Below are positions 8,585 to 59,611 of a stretch of DNA of 64,000 nt, in pieces. Source of the stretch: Macrostomum lignano (lineage: Eukaryota); contig NIVC01000418.1 in assembly GCA_002269645.1 (NCBI GenBank), positions 62,001-126,000 of the forward strand, read 5' to 3'. The notes beneath the pieces were generated by a model. The model was given only the letters and a program-made list of their open reading frames with translations. It did no database searches and was not told the DNA's origin. Made by a program: the position numbers and the translations under genes. Position 1 is the stretch's first letter. The number at the start of each line of letters is the position of its first letter.

Positions 8585-10160
8585 TCATCGTTCAATTTCC
8601 CGAATCAGGCGATCAGAAGCAGCAGACGCGTCGCCTTCAGCGACTTCCAAACGCTGGAGCGTTTCCAGCTCATCCACCTGTGCTCCCCGTGACCAACCGC
8701 CGGTACAGCGAGAGTACACTCCGTTCGGATTGAACAGGGTGCAGCCTCGGAACCACCAGCCGCTTCTTCCGTGATATTTATTCGAACAGGAGGCTGTAAG
8801 CATATCGTTATCCCGATCCGTAGTTGAGAACATACCTCCGTTGCTAAGGCTTAGTTTACTTTCCTTAGCGTTCGATTTCGCCGAATCAACGGGCCCGACA
8901 GTCATGACGTACGAGTAGTTTGTGCTGGCGTTTTGGACGAGAAAGTTCGAGTACTCCTGATACTGCAGCTCGTCGTCCTCCCAGGTCACAACTTGGACGA
9001 GAAGAGTGACTCCGTTGGCGACAGCCGAGCTGAGCTGGTGAATCGCTTCTAGGCCTGCCGATTGGTAAAAATCACAATTAATTCCATCACTTTTTATTAG
9101 TAAACGAAACAATGTCAATACTCTAAGAGTTGAAGCTTAAAATGGACGACTCACCAAGTAGTTTAAATCGTCGCCCAAACCGGTCTCGTACGCACTCCAC
9201 GACTGCTCGAAGCTGGTGTCGCTCACCCGCTGCTGGATGGGGCAGAACTGTCGACCGTCAGTCATGGTCACTATGTTACGCTTGCACTGAGATCCGGTGT
9301 CTGTGGAGGTGTTATGTGTGTCCATTGAATGGTTGGATTTTCTCTTTTTTGGATACTTTTATCACTCTCCAGGACGTTTGCGCTCGTGAGGCTTACTGTT
9401 GGCCCAGGCTCGATTCCCAGTGCAGTCACATTAATTTGGGACTGAATTGGAATCTCGGCTTGGCTCTGCTCGTGAAATTAACGCCCTTGAGGGCCACCAC
9501 CCCCCTCAAGACACAGTGAAGTGTACATGCCTAACTATAAATAAAGTTAGGGCCGCTGTACACTCCTGTGTGAGTGTGTGCCTGTGCGTATGACTGCTTA
9601 CGTATCCGCGCGCTTGTGTGCCTGCTCAGGGGAGTCGGTGGAATGGGCAGAAATGCCTCTCGCCGGTTGTGTGACAATGTCGCATAAAATGCGCCAGGGT
9701 GCACACAGCCAGCTGCCACTAAAAATGCACTGAGTGTATTTACCACCTGAAGCTGAAAAGTCAGAACAGATATGTTCGTCTTTGTGTGCGTTTGTGCGCT
9801 CGAGACCCATCTTAAAATTAACACTGTTGCTGTTATATCTGCATACAGATCGATCCATGTTGACAGTCCTGAAAACTGATGAATTGTTCTCTTCCAAGTT
9901 AATTAGCTGCTCACTTGCTTCGCTTGCGCGCCTCCTATGACCGAGGCTGTACTCAGGTAGACCAAAGCTGGCGAGGCCTCCGTTCTGGTTTGACATCCGG
10001 CACTCGGAGCTGTCCGGTGAGTAGCTGAATGTCCGACAGTAGCTGCGGCTGCTGCACAAAGCGGCGCAGTGAATCTTGCTGCTGGCAACCGATCTGGTCA
10101 CCTGGGCGAACTCGGTGACAAGGTTTGGTGAACTCGATTTGAGTTAGAACTCTAAAGCCA
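8585..10160 (-). pseudogene. PAN/apple + fibrinogen domain gene, copy 2 (disrupted; tail-to-tail with copy 1)
   Basis: PAN exon ~10160-9915 has an in-frame TAA at 10146-10144. FReD N exon 9300-9155 is 146 nt versus 150 in copy 1 (4-nt loss). FReD C exon from 9054 has a frameshift after NPNGVY; the shifted frame gives the canonical W..W..SLKATRLLL end. Signal-peptide exon not found. Confidence 0.85.
9401..9709 (+). mobile_element. tRNA-derived SINE family A, 5'-truncated copy
   Basis: Matches the reverse complement of 28164-28440 over about 300 bp; lies in an intron of PAN-FReD copy 2. Confidence 0.8.
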
Positions 10161-16677: not shown

Positions 16678-17473
16678 GGCTTGGTCAGTTGTGCTCTTAA
16701 ACTGCTCTTCCCATGAGAAGCAAATGCGTCAATTTACCTCCTTAAATACTCTCGTCTCAGAGGAACAACAGGATTTTCAATTTCTTACACCCTACTGCCA
16801 GTAGTAGACTTTAGTGAAACATTGATTGTATTTAACTAAATCAGTTTTTTAAGGGTATTTCTAACACGAACTGCCACAACATGTCTTAGATACTGTAAGG
16901 TACGTGGATGCGTAAAGGTACACATGTACCTGGATACCCACCAGTAAAGGTACCTAGATACCTAAAGATACCTAAAGATACCTGGATACCTAAAGATACC
17001 TGGATACATAGAGATACCTGGATGTGGATACCTAAAGATACCCGAATTACAGGAAGATACCCAAGTGCTTTAAAATGTACCTGGACGTCCATTTAAGGCG
17101 TTACAGATCGCTAACTCGGCATACAAAACAAATTTGTCCTCATTTTCCCCAACCCTATTTTGATTGCTTTCGACTTTGAATGCATTAGGTTGGTCCCCAT
17201 GCACTAAAAAGATTTGCATAAAAAACTTTATTTTTGCAAGTAGCTTAACAATGACTGCAAACAATGCTTGTCTTTCAAACTTCGGGACAGAGCTAAAAAC
17301 ATTTTGCGACCGGAATAAAATCTCTGGGTAGACAGAAAAAGCTGTTTTTATGGGAAATTTCAACTTAAAAGTCTATGTCATAAACATCGGCGCTGAGACT
17401 TAATTTTTTAAACAGATCCTAAAAACAATTTTGTTGCATCAATTTCAAACATACTGACTTCTCTGCATCCTTA

Positions 17474-18334
<861 letters not shown>

Positions 18335-18575: not shown

Positions 18576-21500
18576 TCAGGGTCCCTCTGTAGGCAGTTGA
18601 ACCAACAGCCTGACAGCCTTCAGAGAATTCTTGTTGCCATGCACACTATACCAGTGCACGGCCTTGGGAAAGTTGTCAACCTGGCCCGAGGTCATCCAGC
18701 CGTTCGGGTTAACGTTAGAGCAGCCGCGAAACCACCAGCCGGCGGCGCCGTGATAGATGAGGCTGCAGGATCCGCCGAAATTGTCATTGTCCCTGTCCAT
18801 TGTTGAGAACTTTTCGCCTCTGCAGAGTGACAGAGAATCTCCGGTGACGTTCGAATTGGCGCTGAGAAATCCGGCATAGTCCATTGTGTACTGCGTGCTG
18901 GCGTTCTTCACGACGAATCCCAAATACTCGGCCGAGAACATGGCGTCGGACCAGTCAAAGAGTTCGGCTCTTAGAGTACTGTTGGACAGAGATGTTATCA
19001 GGCTGAGCAGTTCGAGACCTGACAACCAGTGCGGAAATGCGAGCTATGACTGAGATAGTGTCACAAGAGCAATGTGATCAAAATTAATTTGACATGGACA
19101 TTGTGACAAGGATATTGTGACCATTATAGTAATAAATAATAATAATACGAGAAATAATTGATTAGACCTGCCCTTATGAGCAGATGTGCAACCGACAGCT
19201 CAGCCGCAGCTATACAGCTGCGTACGGCTGTTCAGTCCAAGGACTGGGAGGGGGGGGGGTCGCCAAACACCCTCAATTACCCCAGCTAATGCTGGCACCC
19301 ATTTTACAGCTGGGTGAACTGAAGCAATGTAGAGTTAAAAGTCTTGCTCAAGGCCTTAGTGTCTTAGTCAAGGATCCACAAATTGTTCCCGTGGGATCGG
19401 GAATCGAACCCCCGACCTTCAAGTCGGGTATTGTGGTGACCAAAGTGACCATAGTAATAAAACAACAGTAATATGTGCATCAGAAACAGCGAGAACTACC
19501 TCAAGAAAACCAATGGAATCCGACCAACAAAATCCTTACCAATCCAGAAGTTGTCCTCATCTCCAAAGCCGCTCACATAGTCCGGCCAGGGTCGGCTGAA
19601 ATTTACCGAGTCGGTCAGGCGCTGCTGAAAAACGCAGAACAGCTTCGAACCTCGGCACACTTTGCGACAGGCAGACAGTCGGGCATCTGTTTGGAAAAAG
19701 TTTATTGTTGCTGCAGAGCGATAGGATAGAGGCCTAACGCTCTACCAAGCTACTCTACCGAGTTACTCTACCAAGCTACTCTACCGAGCTTCTCTACCAA
19801 GCTACTCTACCGAGCTACTCTACCAAGCTACTCTACCGAGCTACTCTACCAAGCTACTCTACCAAGCTACTCTACCAAGCTACTCTACCAAGCTACTCTA
19901 CCAAGCTACTCTACCAAGCTACTCTACCGAGTTACTCTGCCGAGCTACTCTGTTCACTGGCATCCAATATATTTGTACTGTTTATCCCTACTTTGACCGA
20001 AATTCTATCCAGTTCGTGCGCTATCCCCGCTTGTGAAGGCGTAAACAAGTTATTGTGAGGTTTTGAGAATTTGCGATAAATTTATTGGTTTCTAAAGTGC
20101 CCCATCTATCATGTGTCTGAGTACAGACCTGCAAACTCAAAGCTATTGGAAGTTGACGCCTTGGTGAGCAAACTTAACCATTGTAACATTATTTCTGCAG
20201 CTTTCCAGCTGACTTAAATTGCACCTTTTTAAAGTAAATTTAGCCATTCTTACACACTACATCCGCAGTTCTCATGGTTACGGCACAGGGGGGGCTCTAG
20301 CACTGGGGTTGATGTTGACTCACTGTCAGTGAGAGACACAGTTTCACTCACTGATGATACAGCTGCAGTTTTTTTGCAGTACCTGAGGGTATCGTTGCAT
20401 TTTCACTTTACTCACTTTGGTATATTCACTGGGGGCTTCGGACTCATGGGGGATCAGCAGTGGGGGGGCCTCTTCTGCCTCTCCGGTGTTGAGAATGCGG
20501 AGCACTTCACCCGTGACTGTCCCGCCTCTACTCAGGACAGGCTCACCTACCAAGGCCCAAAACTGAGAATCTTTGTCAGTTCGTCCGCTACCCAAGGGCT
20601 ACCGGGCGAGCGACCATCCACCTTCTGGATTCTCCCGAGGGGGACCGCACTGCGGACACCGGCACCACCGGAACTCCCTGCGCAGCACCAGCTGCCCGTG
20701 GTCGCCAGGGGTTAGCGGGAATAGGCGCACAACGCCTCCCGGCTGTATCAAGAAATGATTCATTTAATGAGCGGTGTAATCAAGCCCTGAGCCCTAAGTG
20801 TTTGTGATCTGATGATGGCTCTGGATGTTCATACTCAAACCAGTCTTGTCATACGTACTAGACCCTGCCTGATGTAACCCATGGATGTCTAAAAAAAATT
20901 AAGTGGCTCTTGCGTCTTATCTATATAACTGAACTCCCTATTTATCTAAAGTTGTGTTCATGATCGAATTCATATTCAAGGCTGTCCATGAAGCCAGAGG
21001 GTGTCCATGAAGCCAGAGGGTGGGACCCAGTGGGTGGAACTGAACTTAGAAGGTCTATGCAGCCAAGAAGATGTTTAAGAAGCTTATGAAGCCACAGCTT
21101 ATGTGGCTTTATGAAGCCACACGGTGTCCATGAATCCAGAGGGTGTCCATGAATCCAGAGGGTGTCCATGAACCCAAAAGGTGTCCATGAATCCAGAGGG
21201 TGTCCATGAACCCAGAGGGTGTCCATGAACCCAGAGGGTGTCCATGAACCCAGAGAATGTCCATGAAGCCATAGTGTCCATGAATCCAGAGGGTGTCCAT
21301 GAATCCAGAGGGTGTCCATGAACCCAGAGGGTGTCCAATCCGGAATGTCTCACCGGCTTTGTGATGCGTCATGCCTTGCGCTCGACTCGACAGGCTGCAA
21401 ACGCCAGCTTGCGAATCGAAACGCAGGTAGCCGCAGGCGTCTCGCATGGCGCACAGAATCGAGCAGGTCGTCTGGCTGTCCGCTGGCAGTTCGATGGAGA

Positions 21501-24919: not shown

Positions 24920-25268
24920 GTCAGCTGCTTTCGGGGCACTGTGTGCAAGCTCTGCGCGACTCTGGGTAAACTCGAGCAAGCGAGTACGTTTTTGTCTGAA
25001 TGCGTTTATTGTTGTTATCTTAGCTGTGTGCGCGGTTCGGCAGTCAGTGGCCCAGATAATTACTCGCAAATAAGGCACAGATTCGGTAGAAGACGACAAC
25101 AGCGACAAGCTTAAAGTGGCTTTGTACTTGGAGTATAGTGTACGCACGCCAGAGCTTGCGTTTTGCGTACGAAAATTGCAAAATGAAATAAAAGCAAGCG
25201 GACATTCAAGCCTTATGTGGCGCTTTCGCAAAGTATTTTCCCAAGCGACTCTCTTAACAGTAATTCGA

Positions 25269-26027
25269 ATGGCCAGAGCGAGTGACGACTTTGACAGCTC
25301 GCTCACCGAATGCGGAATCTGCTTTGAGGAGATGAAAGACCCCAGGGCGTTGCCCTGCCTGCACTCATACTGCCTGGGCTGTCTGCAGGAGGTCTATCGC
25401 AGATCTGGCACACTCTGCTGTCCGGAGTGCCGCAAGCTGACCAACAAACGACCTGACCAGCTGACCAAGGACTTTCGAGTTGAGCAGCTGAGAGCCCTGT
25501 TTAATGCTGGACGAGTCCAGATGGCCCAAGAGGGAGCCAAACTGGCTAAAAGGATTCTACTTGAAGTGGACAGCAAAGCCGATCTGGAGCAGACGATCAG
25601 CGCTTGCGATTCGGAGCTGAAAAGATGCCGACTTGAGCAGGAGAAGAAGATCGCATCGCTAGGCAGCGCAATGGAGCTCCTCACTGACCAGGTGGGGAAC
25701 TGGGCCAACAAGCAGGTGTCCTACCTGAATAGGAGAAAACAATGGGCAGAGAACCAGCTCCAGGTTAGAACCCTGGCCGCTAACTTGCTGGCCGCAGAGA
25801 GACTGGGCAATCTGGACAGCGCCTGTGAGAGCTGCAAGCGGCTGCGGTCGATCCCATGCTATGAGGCACCGCCAAAATTGGATCAGCCGGCGTTTCTCCA
25901 GCCTGATGATCGTCTGATAAGGCTCTATGCTCAAGTGAAAAACCTAATTGAGCCATGTGGTCTGCAGGACAAAGTAAAGCTGCTCAGCCTCTTTCTAGAG
26001 GAGGAGTTCAAGGCTAGCAAGGATTAG
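25269..26027 (+). CDS. Intronless RING-HC finger + coiled-coil protein (TRIM-like without a B-box; putative E3 ligase), 252 aa
   Basis: CGICFEEMKDPRALPCLHSYCLGCL...CPECR is a C3HC4 pattern near the N-terminus, followed by a helical region. ATG at 25269 is preferred over the upstream non-ATG start used in the track. Confidence 0.88.
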   Translation: MARASDDFDSSLTECGICFEEMKDPRALPCLHSYCLGCLQEVYRRSGTLCCPECRKLTNKRPDQLTKDFRVEQLRALFNAGRVQMAQEGAKLAKRILLEVDSKADLEQTISACDSELKRCRLEQEKKIASLGSAMELLTDQVGNWANKQVSYLNRRKQWAENQLQVRTLAANLLAAERLGNLDSACESCKRLRSIPCYEAPPKLDQPAFLQPDDRLIRLYAQVKNLIEPCGLQDKVKLLSLFLEEEFKASKD

Positions 26028-27489: not shown

Positions 27490-30387
27490 TCACTGCGAGC
27501 TGGCACTGTCGGAGCCGCGGTTCCGCCGGCACCCCAGCTGAGCCCTGAACGCTGGCACCCGGATGCAGTAGATCAGCCAGTTCAGCGAGCTGTTGATGAA
27601 GAACAGGTAATTGAAGTTGTTAGCCAGCGAGAACAGAAGCTGCTGGAAGGTCGGATCGGCGCGACGCTCCTCGTCTTGGGTGTACAGCGTGAAGTGCCAG
27701 GTGTAGGCCACCACCCGCGGCACCGAGGCGGCGAGGTGTACGAAGGCGAGGATCACCAAGGTGACGCTGCTTCGAAGCTCGCCACTGCTTGGCCCGCTGT
27801 CGCTGCCGGTGAGGCGGGCTTTGTCGAAGTGAATCTTGCGGATCCGAGCGCACAGGTAGATGTTGGCCGAGGCGAGACAGACCCCGGCCAGCAAGCCATT
27901 CATCACCACGTTGGTGTACACCTGGACGGCCATGTTGACTGCCGGACTGACCGTCAGGGCCACGTAGCAATAGCGAGACCCGAAGTACTCGTAGGCGTCG
28001 TACACCAGCACGCCGTGGACAGCGATGACGGCAAAGGCTAGGACGAATGCGGCTACGGTGACTGAGTACCTGAGGTTGGGCGATGGGGCTTGCCGATGTT
28101 TCTAGGGAATGATTAACTAAGGGGAACTGTTGCTCCTCGGTGGAAGGCTTGAAGAAGATTAAATGGCGCACTTTAAGCGACATTGTCACACAACCAACGA
28201 GAGGCATTGCTGCCCATTCCGCCGACTCCCCTGAGCAGGCACACAAGAGCACAGGCACACACTCACACAGGAGTGTACAGCGGCCCTAACTTTATTCTAT
28301 CGTTAGGCATGTACACTTCACTGCGCCTTGGGGGGTTGGCCCTCAAGGCCGTTAATTGCACGAGCAGAGCCAAGCCGAGATTCCATTTCAGCCCCAAATC
28401 AATGTGACTGCACTGGGAATCGAGCCTGGGTCGCTGGCACATCATAACGCCGTGCCAGGAACACTGAGCTACGGCCTTCGTTTGAAGTGAACAGTGGGGC
28501 TTCACTATGCTATAAGCTCTAAAAGAAGAAATTACGATTAATCAAGTCTTCACCTGGTCCTCGCCATGTGCACCCGGTGGTGCATAGGCCAGCTCAACGC
28601 GTAGACTCGGTCGGCGGCCAGCAGGCAGAGAAAGTTGGACGACAGGCTGTTGCTGAGGATCCAGAAGAAGGACCACAACTGGCAAACCCAGCCCAGCTGC
28701 ACCTGCGGCATCTGGAGGCCCAGGCCGGAGCTCAGAAACTCGCGAGAGAGCAGCCTGAGGGTTGAGGGAATGCAGTCGAGTTGGTGAAAGAATGAATGAA
28801 TGAATGAATAAATAAATGAATGAATGAATAAACGAATGAATAAATGAATGAATGAATAAATAAATAAATAAATAACTGAATGAGTGATGAAGGAAGAAAT
28901 TAAGAAATTAAGAAATTAATAAAAGCATGAGCGAAAAGAAAGCTTGATATATGCCGAATATTTTACAAAAGTACAGCGAGAGCTTGTTTTACTTAGAAAA
29001 TGATTGCTATTAAATGTAATTACTTTCGCAGTAATTATTTCTTTTTGACAAAAAATCGATATAATGATCTGATGATCTGAAATAAAAATGAGAAGCCCTT
29101 TGGTTGGCAGATAGATTAGGTTCAGACAGGGACTGAATTCAATTTAATAGAGCCCCAACTGGGATAATTTGCAAAGGATTCTAGCGGCTCAGAATGTCCC
29201 GAGTGGACTGTCACAGACACATCTTGTGTCCGGATTCTGTGTCACAGTTTCGTCTCACAGATCCCCGAGTTTTTTCGTTGCTTCCCTTAGAATTACATCA
29301 ATGCTGTCAGTTCCAGTTTCTAAGGCTGCGTGCACTGAAAGCTTGGTTCATGGAAGCTGAGCTCTCATCGTTCTGCACCCATGTTTGGGACGTTGTGCAC
29401 CATGCTGTCAACGTCCTGCACCATGCTGTCAACGTCCTGCACCATACTGTCAACGTCCTGCACCATGCTGTCAACGTCCTGCACCATGCTGTCAACGTCC
29501 TGCACCATGCTGTCAACGTCCTGAAACATGCTGTCAACGTCCTGCACCATATTGTCAACCTCCTGTACCATTCTCTGAATGACCTGCACCATACACTCAA
29601 CGTTCAACTTGTACCAGAAGCTCTACTTGTACCAGAGGCTCTGTTTGTACCAGAAGCTCTACTTGTACCAGAAGCTATATTTGTACCAGAAGCTCTACTT
29701 GTACCAGAAGCTCTACTTGTACCAGAAGCTCTATTCGTAAGAGAAGCTCTACTTGTACATTAATTTGGGGCTGAATTGGAATCTCGGCTTGGCTCTGCTC
29801 GTGCAATTAACGGCCTTGAGAGCCAACCCCCCAAGGCGCAGTGAAGTGTACATGCCCAACGATAATATAAAGTTAGAGCCGCTGTACACTCCTGTGTGAG
29901 TGTGTGCCTGCGTACGTATCCGCGCGCTTGTATGCCTGCTCAGGGGAGTCGGCGGAATGGGCAGTAATGCCTCTCGCCGGTTGTGAGCCTATGTCGCTTA
30001 AAGTGCGCCAGGGTGCACACAACCCCTGCTTCTAATAAAAATAATAATCTATTTGTACCAGAAGCTCTACTTGTACCAGCAGCTCTATTCGTACCAGAAG
30101 CTTTATAAAATGCGAAATTCTACGCCTAACGCCAGTTCCTCACGTGCAGACGGCGGTGATCATGTCAGCCGCAGCCAAGCAGCACAGCACGAGATCCTTG
30201 CCCTTCACTCGACGCCAGGACCTGATGGCACAGTACAGCACCACGGCCGCGCCAACGATGGCCAGAAGAGAGAGCGATGGTGCCGCGTACAAGCGAAGAT
30301 AGTTGAGCACTTTGTTGGATGCGGTCAGAGCGGACAGGAGAGTTGGACTTCTGGCGTTCCTGCCGCTACTCGCTGTAGTAGCATTTA
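27490..30387 (-). CDS. Rhodopsin-family (class A) peptide-type GPCR; start exon not located
   Basis: Exons 30387-30144 (NATT, TM1, LAAAD in TM2), 28754-28554 (TM3 with DRV) and 28069-27490 (TM4-7, NSSLNWLIY). Phases are consistent. Confidence 0.88.
28164..28476 (-). mobile_element. tRNA-derived SINE family A, most complete copy (head resembles tRNA-His)
   Basis: Head GGCCGTAGCTCAGTG...GCGTTATG...CAGCGACCCAGGCTCGATTCCCAGTGCAGTCA has A-box-like and B-box-like motifs. Confidence 0.8.
29392..29760. repeat. Adjacent 21-bp (CACCATGCTGTCAACGTCCTG) and 18-bp (CTTGTACCAGAAGCTCTA) minisatellites in a GPCR intron
   Basis: Directly visible; they explain the HHAVNVL and VPEALL ORFs. Confidence 0.9.
29760..30027 (+). 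mobile_element. SINE family A, headless copy
   Basis: Body matches 9430-9709. Confidence 0.75.
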
Positions 30388-32990: not shown

Positions 32991-33693
32991 TTCAGTGGAA
33001 CGGGACTGTCGTATTGATTTTCAGAAGTGCTCAAGGGCCCATGCAAAACAACAAAAAACTAAATAACATGAGTTCTCCCTGCTAGCTCGTATCCCTAGCT
33101 TCTGTTTGAAAGCGCGGCATGAAATCGAACTTTCATGTGAGAAATTTTCAAATCCGTAACACCCAAAGGACGGTCACGTTTTGAGCTGCTGAGATATTTG
33201 AGAACGAAATAAATATAAAAATAGGGAAGCTTAACCGAATATAAGTGCTGCTCAACCGGTACAACAAGCTCTCTATGGCCAAAACTCTATTTAAACTGGC
33301 CATCAACTGGCCAGAAATTTCAGAAGTTTTACAGAAAACTCAAGTGCAGTCTACGGTAGTAGGTGAAGCCAGGCAAAAGGACATGGTATCACACAGTACT
33401 TTGCCCTCCAGTTAACCCCTGATAGACGTACTTACAAAAAATTTTGTCCCCAACCTGCTGCTAGCACAAAAACGACCTCACGCCAGAAAGAAGTTCTTTT
33501 AAAATAGAATACGCGAGGCAGAAAACTATGAGCATGCGCATGCATCTGCTGTCTGAGCAGGAATTACAAGACTAGAGGTGCATGTAATCTGAGTTTTGGG
33601 ATGGGCCGCTCAGTCTCGTAACTTTGATGTCGTGGGTTTTTCATTGATTATGAAAATCAAACAAAGTTTGACAAATTTAGCAAACATGGCCTT

Positions 33694-34010
<317 letters not shown>

Positions 34011-34092
34011 TCGATATTCATAAGGCAGTTTGAAACTGCAAACCACGCACTCGGAAGATATTGAAGGTTACCAGTTGTCGAATGTTCGAAAA

Positions 34093-34133
34093 AAACCGAT
34101 ATTTCGGCCCAGACTGGGCCTTCGTCAGGGTTT
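34093..34133 (-). ncRNA. Minimal type I hammerhead ribozyme motif, copy 1
   Basis: AAACC CUGACGA A GGCCCA-GUC-UGGGCC GAAA UA UC^GGUUU. Stem I is AAACC/GGUUU, stem II has 6 bp, stem III is the palindrome AUAU, and the cleavage triplet is AUC. Confidence 0.8.
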
Positions 34134-35167
34134 ATTTATTCGGGTTTAAAAACAAATATATTGGCAGTGAAGTTATTGTAACATAATTTCAATATATATA
34201 TATGCGACTTTTGGGGGTGCACTGAGCAGTGTTGAGTAAAGATGTGTACGCATAATTAGCTAAAAACGTGAGTTGAAGCACGCTGATTGGTTAAAGATTG
34301 GCAGCTTAAAGCCTTGCACAAAAAATATTAAAGATGTTAGGTGCTATAGAAAAACAGATTTAGAGCGTAGAAGTGTATGAATAAGCATCTTGAAAAGTTC
34401 AACAAATAAGTTATTTACGCCCGTAGAATTGAGAACAAATATTAAATTAAAACAGAGCACTGAGAACTTTGAGAACTGAGAAAATTGAGTCGCCAGGCAG
34501 GCCACTAGTTGCAGTTGGCGGCGTCTGGTCACAGATCGCCGCCTGCACAGCCCCTGGTCACAGGCGACTGGGCACTGCAGATCAGTTGAGGCTAGATTAT
34601 CAGTAGTAGTAGCACTAGTAGTTGCAGTAGTAGCTCGTAGTAGTAGTAATGGAAGTAGTAGTAGTACAAGTATTAGTAGAGTAGTAGTAGAGCAGTCGTA
34701 GGCGTAGTCGTAGTAGAGACGTACTGGTAAGCAGTTATTTGAAGTAGCCAGGCAGGCCACTAGTCGCAGTTGGCGGCGTCTGGTCACAGATCGCCGCCTG
34801 CACAGCCCCTGGTCACAGGCGACTGGGCACTGCGGATCAGTTGAAGCTAGATTTTCAGTAGTAGTAGCACTAGTAGTTGCAGTAGTAGTAGTAGTGGTAG
34901 TAGAGTAGTAGTAGTACAGTCGTAGTCGTAGCCGTAGTCGTAGTAGTGTCGTGCGTCTTAAATATTCAGCTGCAGAAATAGTACTCTTGCTTATCCCAAG
35001 TAGATTTTTGGCGGAGAATAGCTCGTATACGAAGATATTTTGTTGACAAACATGGCGAGCCTCAATAATAGTCCGGTCCTGGGTACAGATATTCATAAGG
35101 CAGTTTGAAACTGCAAACCACGCACTCGGAAGATATTGAAGGTTACCAGTTGTCGAATGTTCGAAAA

Positions 35168-35208
35168 AAACCGATATTTCGGCCCAGACTGGGCCTTCGT
35201 CAGGGTTT
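35168..35208 (-). ncRNA. Minimal type I hammerhead ribozyme motif, copy 2
   Basis: Identical to copy 1, offset by 1075 bp. Confidence 0.8.
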
Positions 35209-36242
35209 ATTTATTCGGGTTTAAAAACAAATATATTGGCAGTGAAGTTATTGTAACATAATTTCAATATATATATATGCGACTTTTGGGGGTGCACTGA
35301 GCAGTGTTGAGTAAAGATGTGTACGCATAATTAGCTAAAAACGTGAGTTGAAGCACGCTGATTGGTTAAAGATTGGCAGCTTAAAGCCTTGCACAAAAAA
35401 TATTAAAGATGTTAGGTGCTATAGAAAAACAGATTTAGAGCGTAGAAGTGTATGAATAAGCATCTTGAAAAGTTCAACAAATAAGTTATTTACGCCCGTA
35501 GAATTGAGAACAAATATTAAATTAAAACAGAGCACTGAGAACTTTGAGAACTGAGAAAATTGAGTCGCCAGGCAGGCCACTAGTTGCAGTTGGCGGCGTC
35601 TGGTCACAGATCGCCGCCTGCACAGCCCCTGGTCACAGGCGACTGGGCACTGCAGATCAGTTGAGGCTAGATTATCAGTAGTAGTAGCACTAGTAGTTGC
35701 AGTAGTAGCTCGTAGTAGTAGTAATGGAAGTAGTAGTAGTACAAGTATTAGTAGAGTAGTAGTAGAGCAGTCGTAGGCGTAGTCGTAGTAGAGACGTACT
35801 GGTAAGCAGTTATTTGAAGTAGCCAGGCAGGCCACTAGTCGCAGTTGGCGGCGTCTGGTCCCAGATCGCCGCCTGCACAGCCCCTGGTCACAGGCGACTG
35901 GGCACTGCGGATCAGTTGAAGCTAGATTTTCAGTAGTAGTAGCACTAGTAGTTGCAGTAGTAGTAGTAGTGGTAGTAGAGTAGTAGTAGTACAGTCGTAG
36001 TCGTAGCCGTAGTCGTAGTAGTGTCGTGCGTCTTAAATATTCAGCTGCAGAAATAGTACTCTTGCTTATCCCAAGTAGATTTTTGGCGGAGAATAGCTCG
36101 TATACGAAGATATTTTGTTGACAAACATGGCGAGCCTCAATAATAGTCCGGTCCTGGGTACAGATATTCATAAGGCAGTTTGAAACTGCAAACCACGCAC
36201 TCGGAAGATATTGAAGGTTACCAGTTGTCGAATGTTCGAAAA

Positions 36243-36283
36243 AAACCGATATTTCGGCCCAGACTGGGCCTTCGTCAGGGTTT
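36243..36283 (-). ncRNA. Minimal type I hammerhead ribozyme motif, copy 3
   Basis: Identical to copy 1, offset by 2150 bp. Confidence 0.8.
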
Positions 36284-36335
36284 ATTTATTCGGGTTTAAA
36301 AACAAATATATTGGCAGTGAAGTTATTGTAACTTT

Positions 36336-36681
<346 letters not shown>

Positions 36682-37254
36682 CTCTTCCCGCCAAAAGACC
36701 CTTGCTACACTCGTGCATTGTGCTCATGCTGGGGCAGTGAACTCGAATCTGCATGTATGACCATGTTTCTGCATGGTTGACACGACTTCATTCGATAGCG
36801 GGTATGACACTACTGAACAAAACGTAACGAACTCAAGTCAATAAGAAACCCAATTCCAACAGTTAACAATTTAGAAATCAACAATGTGAAAAATCAGATC
36901 AATTATATTCAGACCTTTTAATTTGTCTATATAAATATATATTGGCAATTATTTAATCTAGTGTTTGACATTTGAGTCACGGGGAAGGCAATTGTTAGTG
37001 CATTGTTTAACCACAATTACGCAAAAGCAGTGACATGGTTAATCAGTGTGGCTAATTTCTGCTTCATTAAAAACACTTCCGGTTATTAGAGGTCATCACC
37101 ACACAGAAAATGCTTGTGACAACAATATTTTGGAGTAGACAGCCAATTAATAATGGATTGTTGCCCTCGAACAACGGGCTTTTGGGGAATTCTTGAATTT
37201 AAAAATAATGCTGAACAAAATGGGGGTTTGATGAGTCATTCCGTTTTGTCAGGG

Positions 37255-37460
37255 GCGATTTTTATGGCTGGGTCAAAGGTGATTTTTATGGCTGGGTCAG
37301 AGGCGATTCTTATGGCTGGGTCAGAGGCGATTCTTATGGCTGGGTCAGGGGGGCGATTCTTATTGCTTGGTCAGGGGGGCGATTCTTATGGCTTGGTCAG
37401 GGGGGCGATTCTTATGGCTTGGTCAGAGGCGATTTTTATGGCTTGGTCAGAGCCGATTCT
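37255..37460. repeat. 24-bp minisatellite (CTTATGGCTGGGTCAGAGGCGATT)
   Basis: About 8 degenerate copies. Confidence 0.85.
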
Positions 37461-37664
37461 TGTTATTTATTAATGTTATGTTATTTGGGTTTATTAGACA
37501 GGTGTTCAAGCAGGTGTTAAATATGCAGGCAATTAAGACTCTAAAGCAAGAACATAACAACAATGCAGACTCTAAGCCGTTTAAAATCAGTTTTTAAAAA
37601 TTGCTAATAAATATTTTGAAACTAAAAATCAAACAAAGCAGACATAAAACCCAGTCTAGAGAGG

Positions 37665-44608
<6,944 letters not shown>

Positions 44609-59016: not shown

Positions 59017-59611
<595 letters not shown>

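What the first reader, a model, noticed from the sequence alone, without database searches (positions are those of the whole stretch)
34013..36332. Hammerhead-ribozyme tandem array (1075-nt monomer) inserted in a GATA microsatellite
Seen: three identical minimal type I hammerhead motifs on the minus strand (CUGACGA, 6-bp stem II, GAAA, palindromic AUAU stem III, AUC cleavage triplet, stem I AAACC/GGUUU). They are spaced exactly 1075 nt apart in an A-B-A-B-A array with no credible ORF, flanked on both sides by (GATA)n. Known: minimal type I hammerheads with a palindromic stem III are typical of Penelope-like elements and animal non-LTR retrozymes, where tandem copies cleave as dimers. Inference: transcription from the CCAAT/TATA at the end of B would give unit-length 1075-nt RNAs that could circularise and be mobilised in trans. 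That is longer than the few-hundred-nt monomers I recall for animal retrozymes, so this may be an undescribed family.
Basis: partly seen in the sequence, partly recalled or inferred. Interest (0 to 1): 0.88.

Follow-up and report, generated by a model that had tools for sequence, protein, structure and literature searches.

The report
Hammerhead-carrying retroelement array in GATA microsatellite
This is a real, recently active, non-coding mobile element of the flatworm Macrostomum lignano that carries a Penelope-type minimal hammerhead ribozyme motif and always inserts, as partial tandem copies, into (GATA)n microsatellites; it is an undescribed family of an already known kind of element.

Summary
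Window 34013-36332 is 2.16 head-to-tail copies of a 1075-bp unit with one mismatch, lying inside a (GATA)n tract. Each copy carries the same minimal type I hammerhead motif on the minus strand.

The motif also has the features that mark Penelope-like-element (PLE) hammerheads: an unpaired base between A9 and G10.1, a G10.1-C11.1 pair and a palindromic AUAU helix III. No Rfam model detects it. A descriptor scan found none in 200 shuffled windows.

The host is Macrostomum lignano. Four other loci of its assembly carry the same family (17 more units, 1.3-1.9 kb). Every array has the same 3' junction (...GAATATC|(TATC)n), the same orientation and a variable 5' truncation, as target-primed reverse transcription would leave.

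The 3' boundary lies 85 nt downstream of the ribozyme cut site, just after a stem-loop. That matches the internal RT start site of a biochemically studied Poseidon PLE.

My best reading is a non-autonomous PLE-type element (a "retrozyme" in the broad sense), copied from multi-unit RNA in trans. Self-cleavage, RNA circles and the RT-encoding partner remain untested. The 1075-nt unit is only slightly longer than published animal retrozyme families (up to 972 bp). This is a new member of a known kind.

The parts
33694..34016 (.). (GATA)n microsatellite flank. This is the 3' side of the element in its sense (minus) orientation, and the element's last bases (TATC) merge into it.
   Evidence: TRF period 4, 80.8 copies; junction sequence
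34013..35087 (-). Full 1075-bp unit (the downstream unit in the sense orientation)
   Evidence: blastn self-comparison, 100%/99.9% identity
35088..36162 (-). Full 1075-bp unit (the upstream unit in the sense orientation)
36163..36332 (-). 5'-truncated partial copy holding the last 170 nt of a unit, pseudo-LTR-like. It includes a hammerhead but lies downstream of the TATA-like run.
36336..36681 (.). (GATA)n microsatellite flank on the 5' side of the element. Three extra bases (AAA on the sense strand) lie at the junction.
34093..34133 (-). Minimal type I hammerhead motif, copy 3; C17 at 34098
35168..35208 (-). Minimal type I hammerhead motif, copy 2; C17 at 35173
36243..36283 (-). Minimal type I hammerhead motif, copy 1; C17 at 36248
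34191..34301 (-). Promoter-like block: two CCAAT boxes (34286-34290 and 34297-34301 as ATTGG on the + strand) and a TATA-like run (34191-34203). It repeats at 35266-35376. It belongs to the most conserved block of the family.
   Evidence: Sequence; alignment A1; 95.5% identity against 76-78% in the flanks. Promoter function is inferred only.
34025..34039 (-). 6-bp stem-loop GCAGUU-UCA-AACUGC, ending 12 nt before the element's 3' end. It repeats at 35100-35114 and 36175-36189. It is a candidate recognition or initiation site for the reverse transcriptase.
   Evidence: Fold. The old copy L005 keeps the stem through a U-A to U.G change, with the other change in the loop.
34485..34960 (-). Two ~255-bp internal sub-repeats rich in (TAC)n. 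They repeat at 35560-36035. Copy number is 2 here and 3-5 at other loci.
34344..35096 (-). 250-aa low-complexity ORF that starts 9 nt before a unit's 3' end and reads across the tandem junction. A second copy lies at 35419-36171. It is probably not a real protein.
   Evidence: Homologues BOX15_Mlig029405g1, 001316g2, 032641g1 and 001677g1.

Best explanation
The insert is a non-autonomous retroelement of the Penelope-like-element (PLE) type in Macrostomum lignano, which is a 'non-LTR retrozyme' in the broad sense.

Unit layout, on the sense (window minus) strand:
- a non-coding body with 2-5 copies of a 255-bp sub-repeat;
- a conserved ~200-nt block holding CCAAT and TATA motifs and a PLE-style minimal hammerhead;
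- an ~85-nt tail that ends in a small stem-loop and ...GAAUAUC.

Proposed cycle:
- Pol II transcribes arrays into multi-unit RNA.
- A PLE reverse transcriptase/endonuclease supplied in trans nicks a (GATA)n/(TATC)n tract.
- It starts cDNA synthesis internally on the RNA, at the UAUC next to the stem-loop, 85 nt downstream of the ribozyme cut site. The GATA 3' end of the target probably pairs there.
- It copies back through one or more units and stops at variable points.
- The result is a 5'-truncated copy followed by full copies (pseudo-LTR layout), always in one orientation inside the microsatellite.
- The hammerhead probably works only as a dimer or with protein help. It may trim or circularise the RNA, but cleavage is not needed to explain the insertions.

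Shown: the anatomy, the multi-locus family, the invariant 3' junction, the variable 5' ends, the target and orientation specificity, and the conserved block.

Inferred: the promoter, the identity of the RT, self-cleavage and any circular RNA.
For: Hammerhead core and PLE-specific extras:
- All core positions are present, together with the four features that Cervera & de la Pena 2014 (PMC4209133) list as characteristic of PLE min-HHRs.
[quoted passage not shown] All four are met.
- Expected by chance: 0 hits in 200 shuffles.

Family:
- The element ORF hits M. lignano proteins.
- Loci L004-L007 of GCA_002269645.1 hold 17 more hammerhead-bearing units.
- The young copies are 98.6-100% identical to the window unit outside the sub-repeats.

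Junctions:
- All seven other arrays end ...CCTT(A/T)TG(A/C)ATATC|(TATC)n, as the window array does.
- 5' ends differ, at unit positions 906, 826, 305, ~315 and ~137.
- Tandem junctions are always GAATATC|TGTACC.
- The hammerhead-sense strand is always the TATC strand.

A partial copy followed by full copies is the PLE hallmark, and PLEs show a microsatellite insertion bias (PMC8557442).

In the Poseidon PLE of Anolis, reverse transcription starts internally in a stem-loop 111-118 nt into the ORF, with the hammerhead cut 26 nt into the ORF. That places the start ~85-92 nt downstream of the cut, on unprocessed multi-copy RNA (PMC11167929). Here the boundary is 85 nt downstream of C17 and 12 nt after a stem-loop.

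The CCAAT-to-hammerhead block is 95.5% identical between the old copy L005 and the young copies, against 76-78% in the flanks (Fisher p = 2e-5).

The Mlig_3_7 gene models are built from RNA-seq transcripts (PMC5730564), and four of them lie on these arrays. The arrays are therefore transcribed.

No protein domain is found in any frame. GC content is 43%.
Against: - No RT or GIY-YIG partner was found. There is no YxDD or GIY-YIG motif in the window or in L004-L007, and no annotated protein shares the ORF's N-terminus.
- No Rfam hammerhead model matches.
- Only one diverged copy is available, so there is no covariation evidence for the ribozyme helices. That copy's single change breaks a helix II pair.
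- Helix III (AUAU) is very weak, and a local hairpin (-6.0 kcal/mol) competes for the cleavage site.
- The PLE 'tail' and inverted 5' copies were not seen.
- Unlike Poseidon, the initiation site here is homologous to the target.
- The strand of transcription is not proven, because the gene models may have been oriented by the ORF.
- Unit lengths differ within single arrays (L004 about 1878/1365/1621 bp). DNA-level slippage or unequal exchange must therefore also act.
Confidence: 0.62

Rival explanations
1. Classical retrozyme cycle. Hammerhead cleavage at two successive sites releases a unit-length RNA. A tRNA ligase circularises it. A reverse transcriptase copies the circle by rolling-circle synthesis, which produces the tandem arrays.
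For: - The tandem copies in the window are identical in length and differ at one base.
- L007 has five units of 1619-1621 bp.
- The hammerhead sits so that helix I would bring the two ends of a monomer together.
- This is the published model for animal retrozymes and was proposed for PLEs (PMC7229834, PMC4209133).
- An internal priming site is needed in any case, and a circle provides one.
Against: - Animal retrozymes shown to form circles carry canonical hammerheads with loop-loop contacts. Minimal PLE hammerheads cleave poorly in vitro.
- The monomer RNA is not unusually structured (circular MFE z = -1.5, 50% paired).
- Arrays such as L004 have units of three different lengths, which a single circle cannot produce.
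- In the one PLE tested, hammerhead mutants did not affect insertion, and no reads ended at the cut site.
Confidence: 0.2
2. A SINE-like passenger of a LINE whose RT recognises a 3' stem-loop plus a (UAUC)n tail. On this view the (TATC)n downstream is the element's own tail or the annealing target. The hammerhead only trims read-through transcripts, as in the schistosome SM-alpha element.
For: - A conserved stem-loop lies 12 nt from the 3' end, followed directly by a simple repeat.
- The 3' end is invariant and the 5' ends are truncated.
- Flatworm SINE-like elements with hammerheads are known.
Against: - Head-to-tail partial tandems are not what LINE/SINE insertion produces.
- The microsatellite also lies upstream of most arrays and runs for up to 8 kb.
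- The hammerhead has the PLE-specific minimal form, not the canonical SM-alpha form.
- No tRNA-like head is present.
- No LINE partner was found either.
Confidence: 0.1
3. An ordinary DNA-level tandem duplication or satellite within a microsatellite. The hammerhead-like motif is a chance match, or the tandem structure is an assembly artefact.
For: - Sub-repeat number and unit length vary within arrays.
- L004 and L006 contain DNA-level duplications of [microsatellite + partial copy] blocks.
- M. lignano assemblies are known to be difficult.
- Rfam finds nothing.
Against: - The same unit occurs at five separate loci. Each has the identical 3' junction, one orientation and a different 5' truncation.
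- No motif turns up in 200 shuffles.
- The hammerhead block is the best-conserved part of the only diverged copy.
- Tandem organisation recurs at independent loci of a long-read assembly.
Confidence: 0.04

Closest known systems
Minimal hammerheads in the pseudo-LTRs of Penelope-like elements (Cervera & de la Pena 2014, PMC4209133), including Cercyon PLEs of the flatworm Schistosoma mansoni
   Same: - Type I topology.
- Helix I of 5 bp and helix II of 6 bp.
- An unpaired base between A9 and G10.1, and a G10.1-C11.1 pair.
- Palindromic helix III with no loop.
- Location in the repeated terminal part of a partial-tandem insertion.
   Different: No RT/GIY-YIG ORF lies between the repeats. The body is a non-coding sub-repeat array. 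The sequence is unrelated to any published PLE that I could compare.
Animal non-LTR retrozymes (Cervera & de la Pena 2020, PMC7229834; Li, Clavereau & Pollet 2026, 10.64898/2026.07.22.740005)
   Same: - Non-coding tandem repeats with a type I hammerhead in every unit.
- GC content below 45%.
- Dispersed arrays ranging from dimers to multimers.
- Proposed derivation from PLE pseudo-LTRs.
   Different: - Units are 1075-1876 bp, against 51-972 bp published.
- The hammerhead is minimal rather than canonical.
- Insertion is strict and orientation-specific, into (GATA)n.
- The 3' boundary is defined and lies 85 nt from the cut site.
- Circular RNA has not been shown.
Poseidon PLE of Anolis carolinensis, characterised in vitro (Frangieh et al. 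2024, PMC11167929)
   Same: - Multi-copy RNA serves as template.
- Reverse transcription starts internally in or next to a stem-loop, ~85-92 nt downstream of the hammerhead cut (85 nt here).
- The hammerhead is not needed to explain the insertions.
- The promoter is thought to lie in the repeated region.
   Different: - Poseidon is autonomous, targets AT-rich DNA, and initiates at a site not homologous to the target.
- Here the last four bases match the target repeat, and the target is a tetranucleotide microsatellite.
SM-alpha / Sj-alpha SINE-like elements and W-element satellites of schistosomes
   Same: Flatworm, non-coding, hammerhead-bearing repeats that are often in tandem and are transcribed.
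   Different: Those are ~335 bp with a canonical, efficiently cleaving hammerhead. No microsatellite specificity is reported for them.
Plant LTR retrozymes
   Same: Similar size (600-1000 nt); non-autonomous; flanked by hammerheads.
   Different: Those carry type III hammerheads in true LTRs, with a primer binding site (PBS), a polypurine tract (PPT) and 4-bp target duplications. They depend on Gypsy elements and have GC above 55%.

Membership tests
Hammerhead ribozyme (type I) | Conserved core: C3 U4 G5 A6 N7 G8 A9, G12 A13 A14, A15.1-U16.1, H17 | tested here: met
   CUGACGA ... GAAA UAU C, with C17 at the cleavage position. One extra A lies after A9; this is known in natural hammerheads and typical of PLE ones.
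Hammerhead ribozyme (type I) | Three helices around the core | tested here: inconclusive
   Helices I (5 bp) and II (6 bp) form in the MFE fold at -14.3 kcal/mol. Helix III (AUAU) can form only between two copies and is unstable alone at +1.6 kcal/mol.
Hammerhead ribozyme (type I) | Match to the curated Rfam hammerhead models | tested here: not met
   No hit at gathering score or at E<=10 over 33900-36450. My inference is that this is expected for a motif without helix III and with a core insertion.
Hammerhead ribozyme (type I) | Site-specific self-cleavage | not testable with these tools
   Needs in vitro transcription of monomer and dimer constructs.
Hammerhead ribozyme (type I) | Covariation supporting the helices | tested here: inconclusive
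   Of 20 copies, 16 are identical across the 41-nt motif. The only diverged copy (L005) has one change, and it breaks a helix II pair.
PLE-type minimal hammerhead (Cervera & de la Pena 2014) | Short helix I (4-5 bp), long helix II (6-8 bp), nucleotide between 9 and 10.1, G10.1-C11.1, palindromic 15.2-16.2 | tested here: met
   Helix I is 5 bp and helix II 6 bp. The unpaired A, the G-C closing pair and palindromic AUAU are all present.
Penelope-like element (autonomous) | ORF with telomerase-like RT and GIY-YIG endonuclease | tested here: not met
   No Pfam domain in any frame of the unit. No YxDD or GIY-YIG motif in the window or in L004-L007.
Penelope-like element (insertion signature) | A 5'-truncated copy ahead of full copies (pseudo-LTR), frequent 5' truncation, microsatellite bias | tested here: met
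   Seen in the window, L004, L006 and L007, against the description in PMC8557442.
Penelope-like element (insertion signature) | 30-40-bp 'tail' extension and/or an adjacent inverted 5'-truncated copy | tested here: not met
   No inverted repeats in 33000-37500. The junctions show no tail, only AAA at the window's 5' junction. Both features are optional in PLEs.
Penelope-like element (insertion signature) | Internal RT start downstream of the hammerhead, in a stem-loop | tested here: met
   The 3' boundary is 85 nt after C17 and 12 nt after a 6-bp stem-loop. Poseidon shows ~85-92 nt. This is an analogy of position, not a biochemical test.
Non-LTR retrozyme (operational definition of Li et al. 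2026) | Tandem repeat with a complete type I hammerhead (canonical or minimal, MFE < -5 kcal/mol) in at least two consecutive units, and no ORF | tested here: met
   Three consecutive motifs at -14.3 kcal/mol. There is no domain-bearing ORF. The unit exceeds their 1000-bp TRF period limit.
Non-LTR retrozyme | Accumulation of unit-length linear and circular RNA | not testable with these tools
   Only indirect evidence of transcription is available, from RNA-seq-based gene models on the arrays.
SINE | tRNA-, 5S- or 7SL-derived head with an internal pol III promoter | tested here: not met
   No tRNA-like sequence and no Rfam hit.

The most novel reading that the evidence does not exclude
The family is the passenger of a still-undescribed, currently active PLE lineage in Macrostomum lignano. 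On this reading the endonuclease/RT is specific for (GATA)n and primes by base-pairing of the nicked GATA end to an internal UAUC of the template. That differs from the non-homologous internal initiation seen in Poseidon. The 1.1-1.9-kb monomers would also be released by (protein-assisted) hammerhead cleavage as the largest animal retrozyme circles known. Because M. lignano is transgenic-tractable, this would be a first in vivo system in which hammerhead function and PLE mobilisation can be tested genetically.
Probability: 0.2. Interest if true: 0.6.

Novelty: new member of a known kind. Interest (0 to 1): 0.4.

Why it matters
What PLE hammerheads do, and how PLEs and retrozymes are copied into tandem arrays, are still open questions.

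This family offers a compact example, with units of only 1.1-1.9 kb. Young copies at different loci are 98.6-100% identical outside the sub-repeats, so it looks young. Its 3' boundary, its target and its orientation can all be read directly from the genome. It also occurs in a flatworm that can be grown, injected and made transgenic.

The 85-nt offset between the ribozyme cut site and the insertion boundary supports internal initiation of reverse transcription, so far shown for one lizard element in vitro. The support comes from genomic data in a distant phylum and is independent of that work.

For genome annotation, four GenBank 'hypothetical proteins' of M. lignano are almost certainly translations of this repeat.

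Tried and rejected
- Rfam at gathering score on the whole window, and at E<=10 on the region: no hammerhead hit. The only result was a sub-threshold mir-34 match (16.8 bits against 53.4), which I treat as noise.
- Exact-pattern scan for the hammerhead in viral contigs: nothing.
- The same scan in JGI metagenomes: three contigs (two share the same sequence) with unrelated flanks, about what chance predicts for the pattern. They say nothing about this family.
- Exact look-up of the window's 250-aa ORF: not on record.
- Coding potential: no Pfam domain in the ORF, its GenBank homologue or any of the six frames.
- tRNA-like head: none.
- RT/GIY-YIG partner: motif scans of the window and of about 86 kb of related loci were negative. 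ORF lists of L001, L002 and L005 showed nothing RT-like.
- I ran no further search on a PLE probe written from memory. Hits from other animals would have swamped any M. lignano hit.
- Viroid-like compact fold of the monomer: not supported (z = -1.5).
- A fixed transcription start explaining the 5' ends: rejected, because the 5' ends differ among loci (906, 826, 305, ~315, ~137).
- Priming at the ribozyme-made 3' end: rejected, because no copy ends at the cut site even though that end would also read ...AUAUC.
- Lunse et al. 2017, on dimeric cleavage of PLE hammerheads, is not held in the library.
Full report
**1. The observation**

Window 34013-36332 consists of two complete 1075-bp units (34013-35087 and 35088-36162) and a 170-bp partial unit (36163-36332). 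The two full units differ at one base (34786 A versus 35861 C), and the partial copy is identical to the others. No other copy lies in the window. (GATA)n tracts of 323 and 346 bp abut both ends.

On the minus strand each copy reads AAACC-CUGACGA-A-GGCCCA-GUC-UGGGCC-GAAA-UAU-C|GGUUU. C17 falls at 36248, 35173 and 34098.

I wrote a descriptor for a minimal type I hammerhead. It requires helix I and helix II of at least 4 bp, 0-1 inserted base after A9, a palindromic helix III and UH. It finds only these three sites in the 64-kb window and none in 200 dinucleotide-preserving shuffles. The 41-nt motif folds into helices I and II at -14.3 kcal/mol.

There is an unpaired A between A9 and G10.1. There is also a 250-aa low-complexity ORF on the minus strand that reads across the unit junction and has no Pfam domain.

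**2. The suggested Rfam test is negative**

No Rfam family reaches gathering score in the window. Nothing hammerhead-like appears even at E<=10 over the region. I take this to reflect the missing helix III and the core insertion, not absence of the motif, but it is a membership test that was not met.

**3. What kind of hammerhead it is**

Cervera & de la Pena 2014 (PMC4209133) describe the hammerheads in the pseudo-LTRs of Penelope-like elements (PLEs), including those of the flatworm Schistosoma mansoni. These have:
- a short helix I (4-5 bp);
- a long helix II (6-8 bp);
- a conserved G10.1-C11.1 pair;
- palindromic positions 15.2-16.2, so that helix III forms only between two copies.

Every one of these is present here. 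The same paper and a later review (PMC6765202) report that such motifs cleave very poorly in vitro, even as dimers.

My calculations agree. An AUAU/AUAU duplex is unfavourable on its own (+1.6 kcal/mol). A local hairpin, GGCCGA-AAUA-UCGGUU (-6.0 kcal/mol), competes for the cleavage site.

**4. Host and family**

A UDP-GlcNAc pyrophosphorylase exon in the window is most similar to a Macrostomum lignano protein (76% identity).

The element's ORF matches M. lignano GenBank proteins at 97-100% identity. Their 90% cluster adds two more. The four encoding loci of assembly GCA_002269645.1 (L004-L007) each contain the element. Together they hold 17 further hammerhead-bearing units.

The young copies are 98.6-100% identical to the window unit outside the sub-repeats. 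L005 is an older copy at about 80% identity.

Unit length varies (1075, about 1330-1365, 1585-1621 and 1876 bp) with the number of 255-bp (TAC)n-rich sub-repeats.

The window is thus from M. lignano or a very close relative, and the family is multi-copy and young. I found no paper that links Macrostomum with hammerheads or PLEs.

**5. Insertion signature**

With the hammerhead strand as sense, every array ends in the same sequence...CCTTATGAATATC, followed directly by (TATC)n. The old copy reads ...CCTTTTGCATATC.

Every internal junction is GAATATC|TGTACC(C)AGG.

The 5' ends differ: unit position 906 in the window, 826 in L006, 305 in L004, about 315 in L007 and about 137 in L005. Most 5' ends abut (TATC)n as well. 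L007 has 380 bp of unrelated sequence there.

An invariant 3' end, variable 5' truncation, one orientation and one target together are the signature of target-primed reverse transcription into a specific repeat. A 5'-truncated copy followed by full copies is the pseudo-LTR layout typical of PLEs, which also show microsatellite insertion bias (PMC8557442).

Some features are DNA-level. L004 and L006 each contain a duplicated [microsatellite + partial copy] block. Unit lengths differ within arrays. A hAT-like MITE sits inside one unit.

**6. Where reverse transcription starts**

The unit contains four TATC sites (sense positions 51, 987, 1028 and 1072). The one at 987-990 is the end that hammerhead cleavage would create. 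Even so, only the site at 1072-1075 is ever the genomic 3' boundary. That site is 85 nt downstream of C17 and 12 nt after a 6-bp stem-loop (GCAGUU-UCA-AACUGC).

The old copy L005 keeps the stem through a U-A to U.G change, and its other change is in the loop.

This layout matches the only PLE studied biochemically. In Poseidon of Anolis the hammerhead cut is 26 nt into the ORF, and reverse transcription starts internally, in a stem-loop 111-118 nt into the ORF. The template is unprocessed multi-copy RNA, and hammerhead mutants do not affect insertion (PMC11167929).

The offset there is about 85-92 nt, and here it is 85 nt (81-85 nt, allowing for the TATC overlap with the target). One difference is that the start site here is homologous to the target, whereas in Poseidon it is not.

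**7. Conserved block and transcription**

Between L005 and the young copies, the stretch from the two CCAAT boxes through the TATA-like run to the end of the hammerhead is 95.5% identical (9 differences in 202 positions). The 3' tail is 78% identical, the sequence just upstream 76%, and the sub-repeats about 80% (Fisher p = 2e-5). This argues that the promoter-like region plus the hammerhead is the constrained part of the element. With a single diverged copy it does not single out the ribozyme.

The GenBank annotation of Mlig_3_7 was built from RNA-seq transcript assemblies (PMC5730564). The four gene models on these arrays therefore indicate transcription. The strand may have been assigned from the ORF.

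**8. Circles**

The cut-to-cut monomer is not unusually structured (circular MFE -242 kcal/mol, z = -1.5, 50% paired). Nothing here tests circularisation.

Identical tandem units in the window and in most of L007 would fit rolling-circle copying of a circle. The mixed unit lengths in L004 would not.

**9. Size claim**

Li, Clavereau & Pollet 2026 (10.64898/2026.07.22.740005) find animal retrozyme families of 51-972 bp, using a 1000-bp period limit. They report a mean of 650 bp in ray-finned fishes, and they derive these families from PLE pseudo-LTRs. A unit of 1075-1876 bp extends that range but is not a different kind of thing.

**10. Verdict**

The finding is real and was read essentially correctly. 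It is a non-autonomous, hammerhead-bearing, PLE-type retroelement family of M. lignano, specific for (GATA)n. It is undescribed as far as I could search, but it is a new member of a known kind.

The RT partner, self-cleavage and circular RNA remain to be shown.

Noticed in passing
L004:7513-8741: A ~1.2-kb MITE sits inside one element unit. It has terminal inverted repeats CAGTGTTGGGCA... and an 8-bp target duplication CTTACCAG, which is hAT-like.
   Followed up: partly
L006:18657-19654: A ~1-kb mariner/Tc1-like remnant with long terminal inverted repeats, a TA duplication and an HTH_32 remnant (E = 8.5e-9). It is also inserted in a (GATA)n tract, in a different way from the hammerhead element.
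   Followed up: partly
window 8585-9118 (-), 18576-19025 (-), 25116-26027 (+), 27490-28011 (-), 39135-39650 (-): Host gene fragments around the element: two Fibrinogen_C domain ORFs, a RING-finger ORF, a weak Srw-like GPCR fragment and a UDPGP (UAP1-like) exon. The UAP1-like exon abuts a 2.2-kb (ACAG)n tract, so the mechanical ORF runs on for 879 aa.
   Followed up: partly
window, whole: The window is extremely dense in micro- and minisatellites. TRF gives 36 rows with score >=200, including (ACTA)n 17473-18334, (ACAG)n 39691-41870, (TGTC)n 59017-59611 and many arrays of 13-170-bp period. This fits the known repeat-rich M. lignano genome.
   Followed up: no
L002:1496-1536 (-), L003:1002-1042 (+): Two JGI metagenome contigs share an unrelated sequence with a min-hammerhead-like motif that has the same CUGACGA-N ... 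CGAAAUAUC-GGU core. It may be a PLE motif of a host animal in that sample. The number of hits is about what chance predicts for the pattern.
   Followed up: partly
L004:10001-10822; L005:10001-10423; L006:10001-13567; L007:10001-11901: GenBank 'hypothetical proteins' BOX15_Mlig029405g1, 001677g1, 001316g2 and 032641g1 are translations of this repeat and of the adjacent (TATC)n. They have no domains and are likely annotation artefacts.
   Followed up: yes
window 34155-34198 and 35230-35273 (+): A sub-threshold mir-34 covariance-model match (16.8 bits against a gathering score of 53.4, E = 3.3) lies on the antisense strand of the element. I judged it to be noise.
   Followed up: no
window 34013-35087 (sense positions 51, 987, 1028, 1072): Unexplained: of the four TATC sites in the unit, only the last ever forms the 3' junction. 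The site created by hammerhead cleavage would also end in ...AUAUC but is never used.
   Followed up: partly
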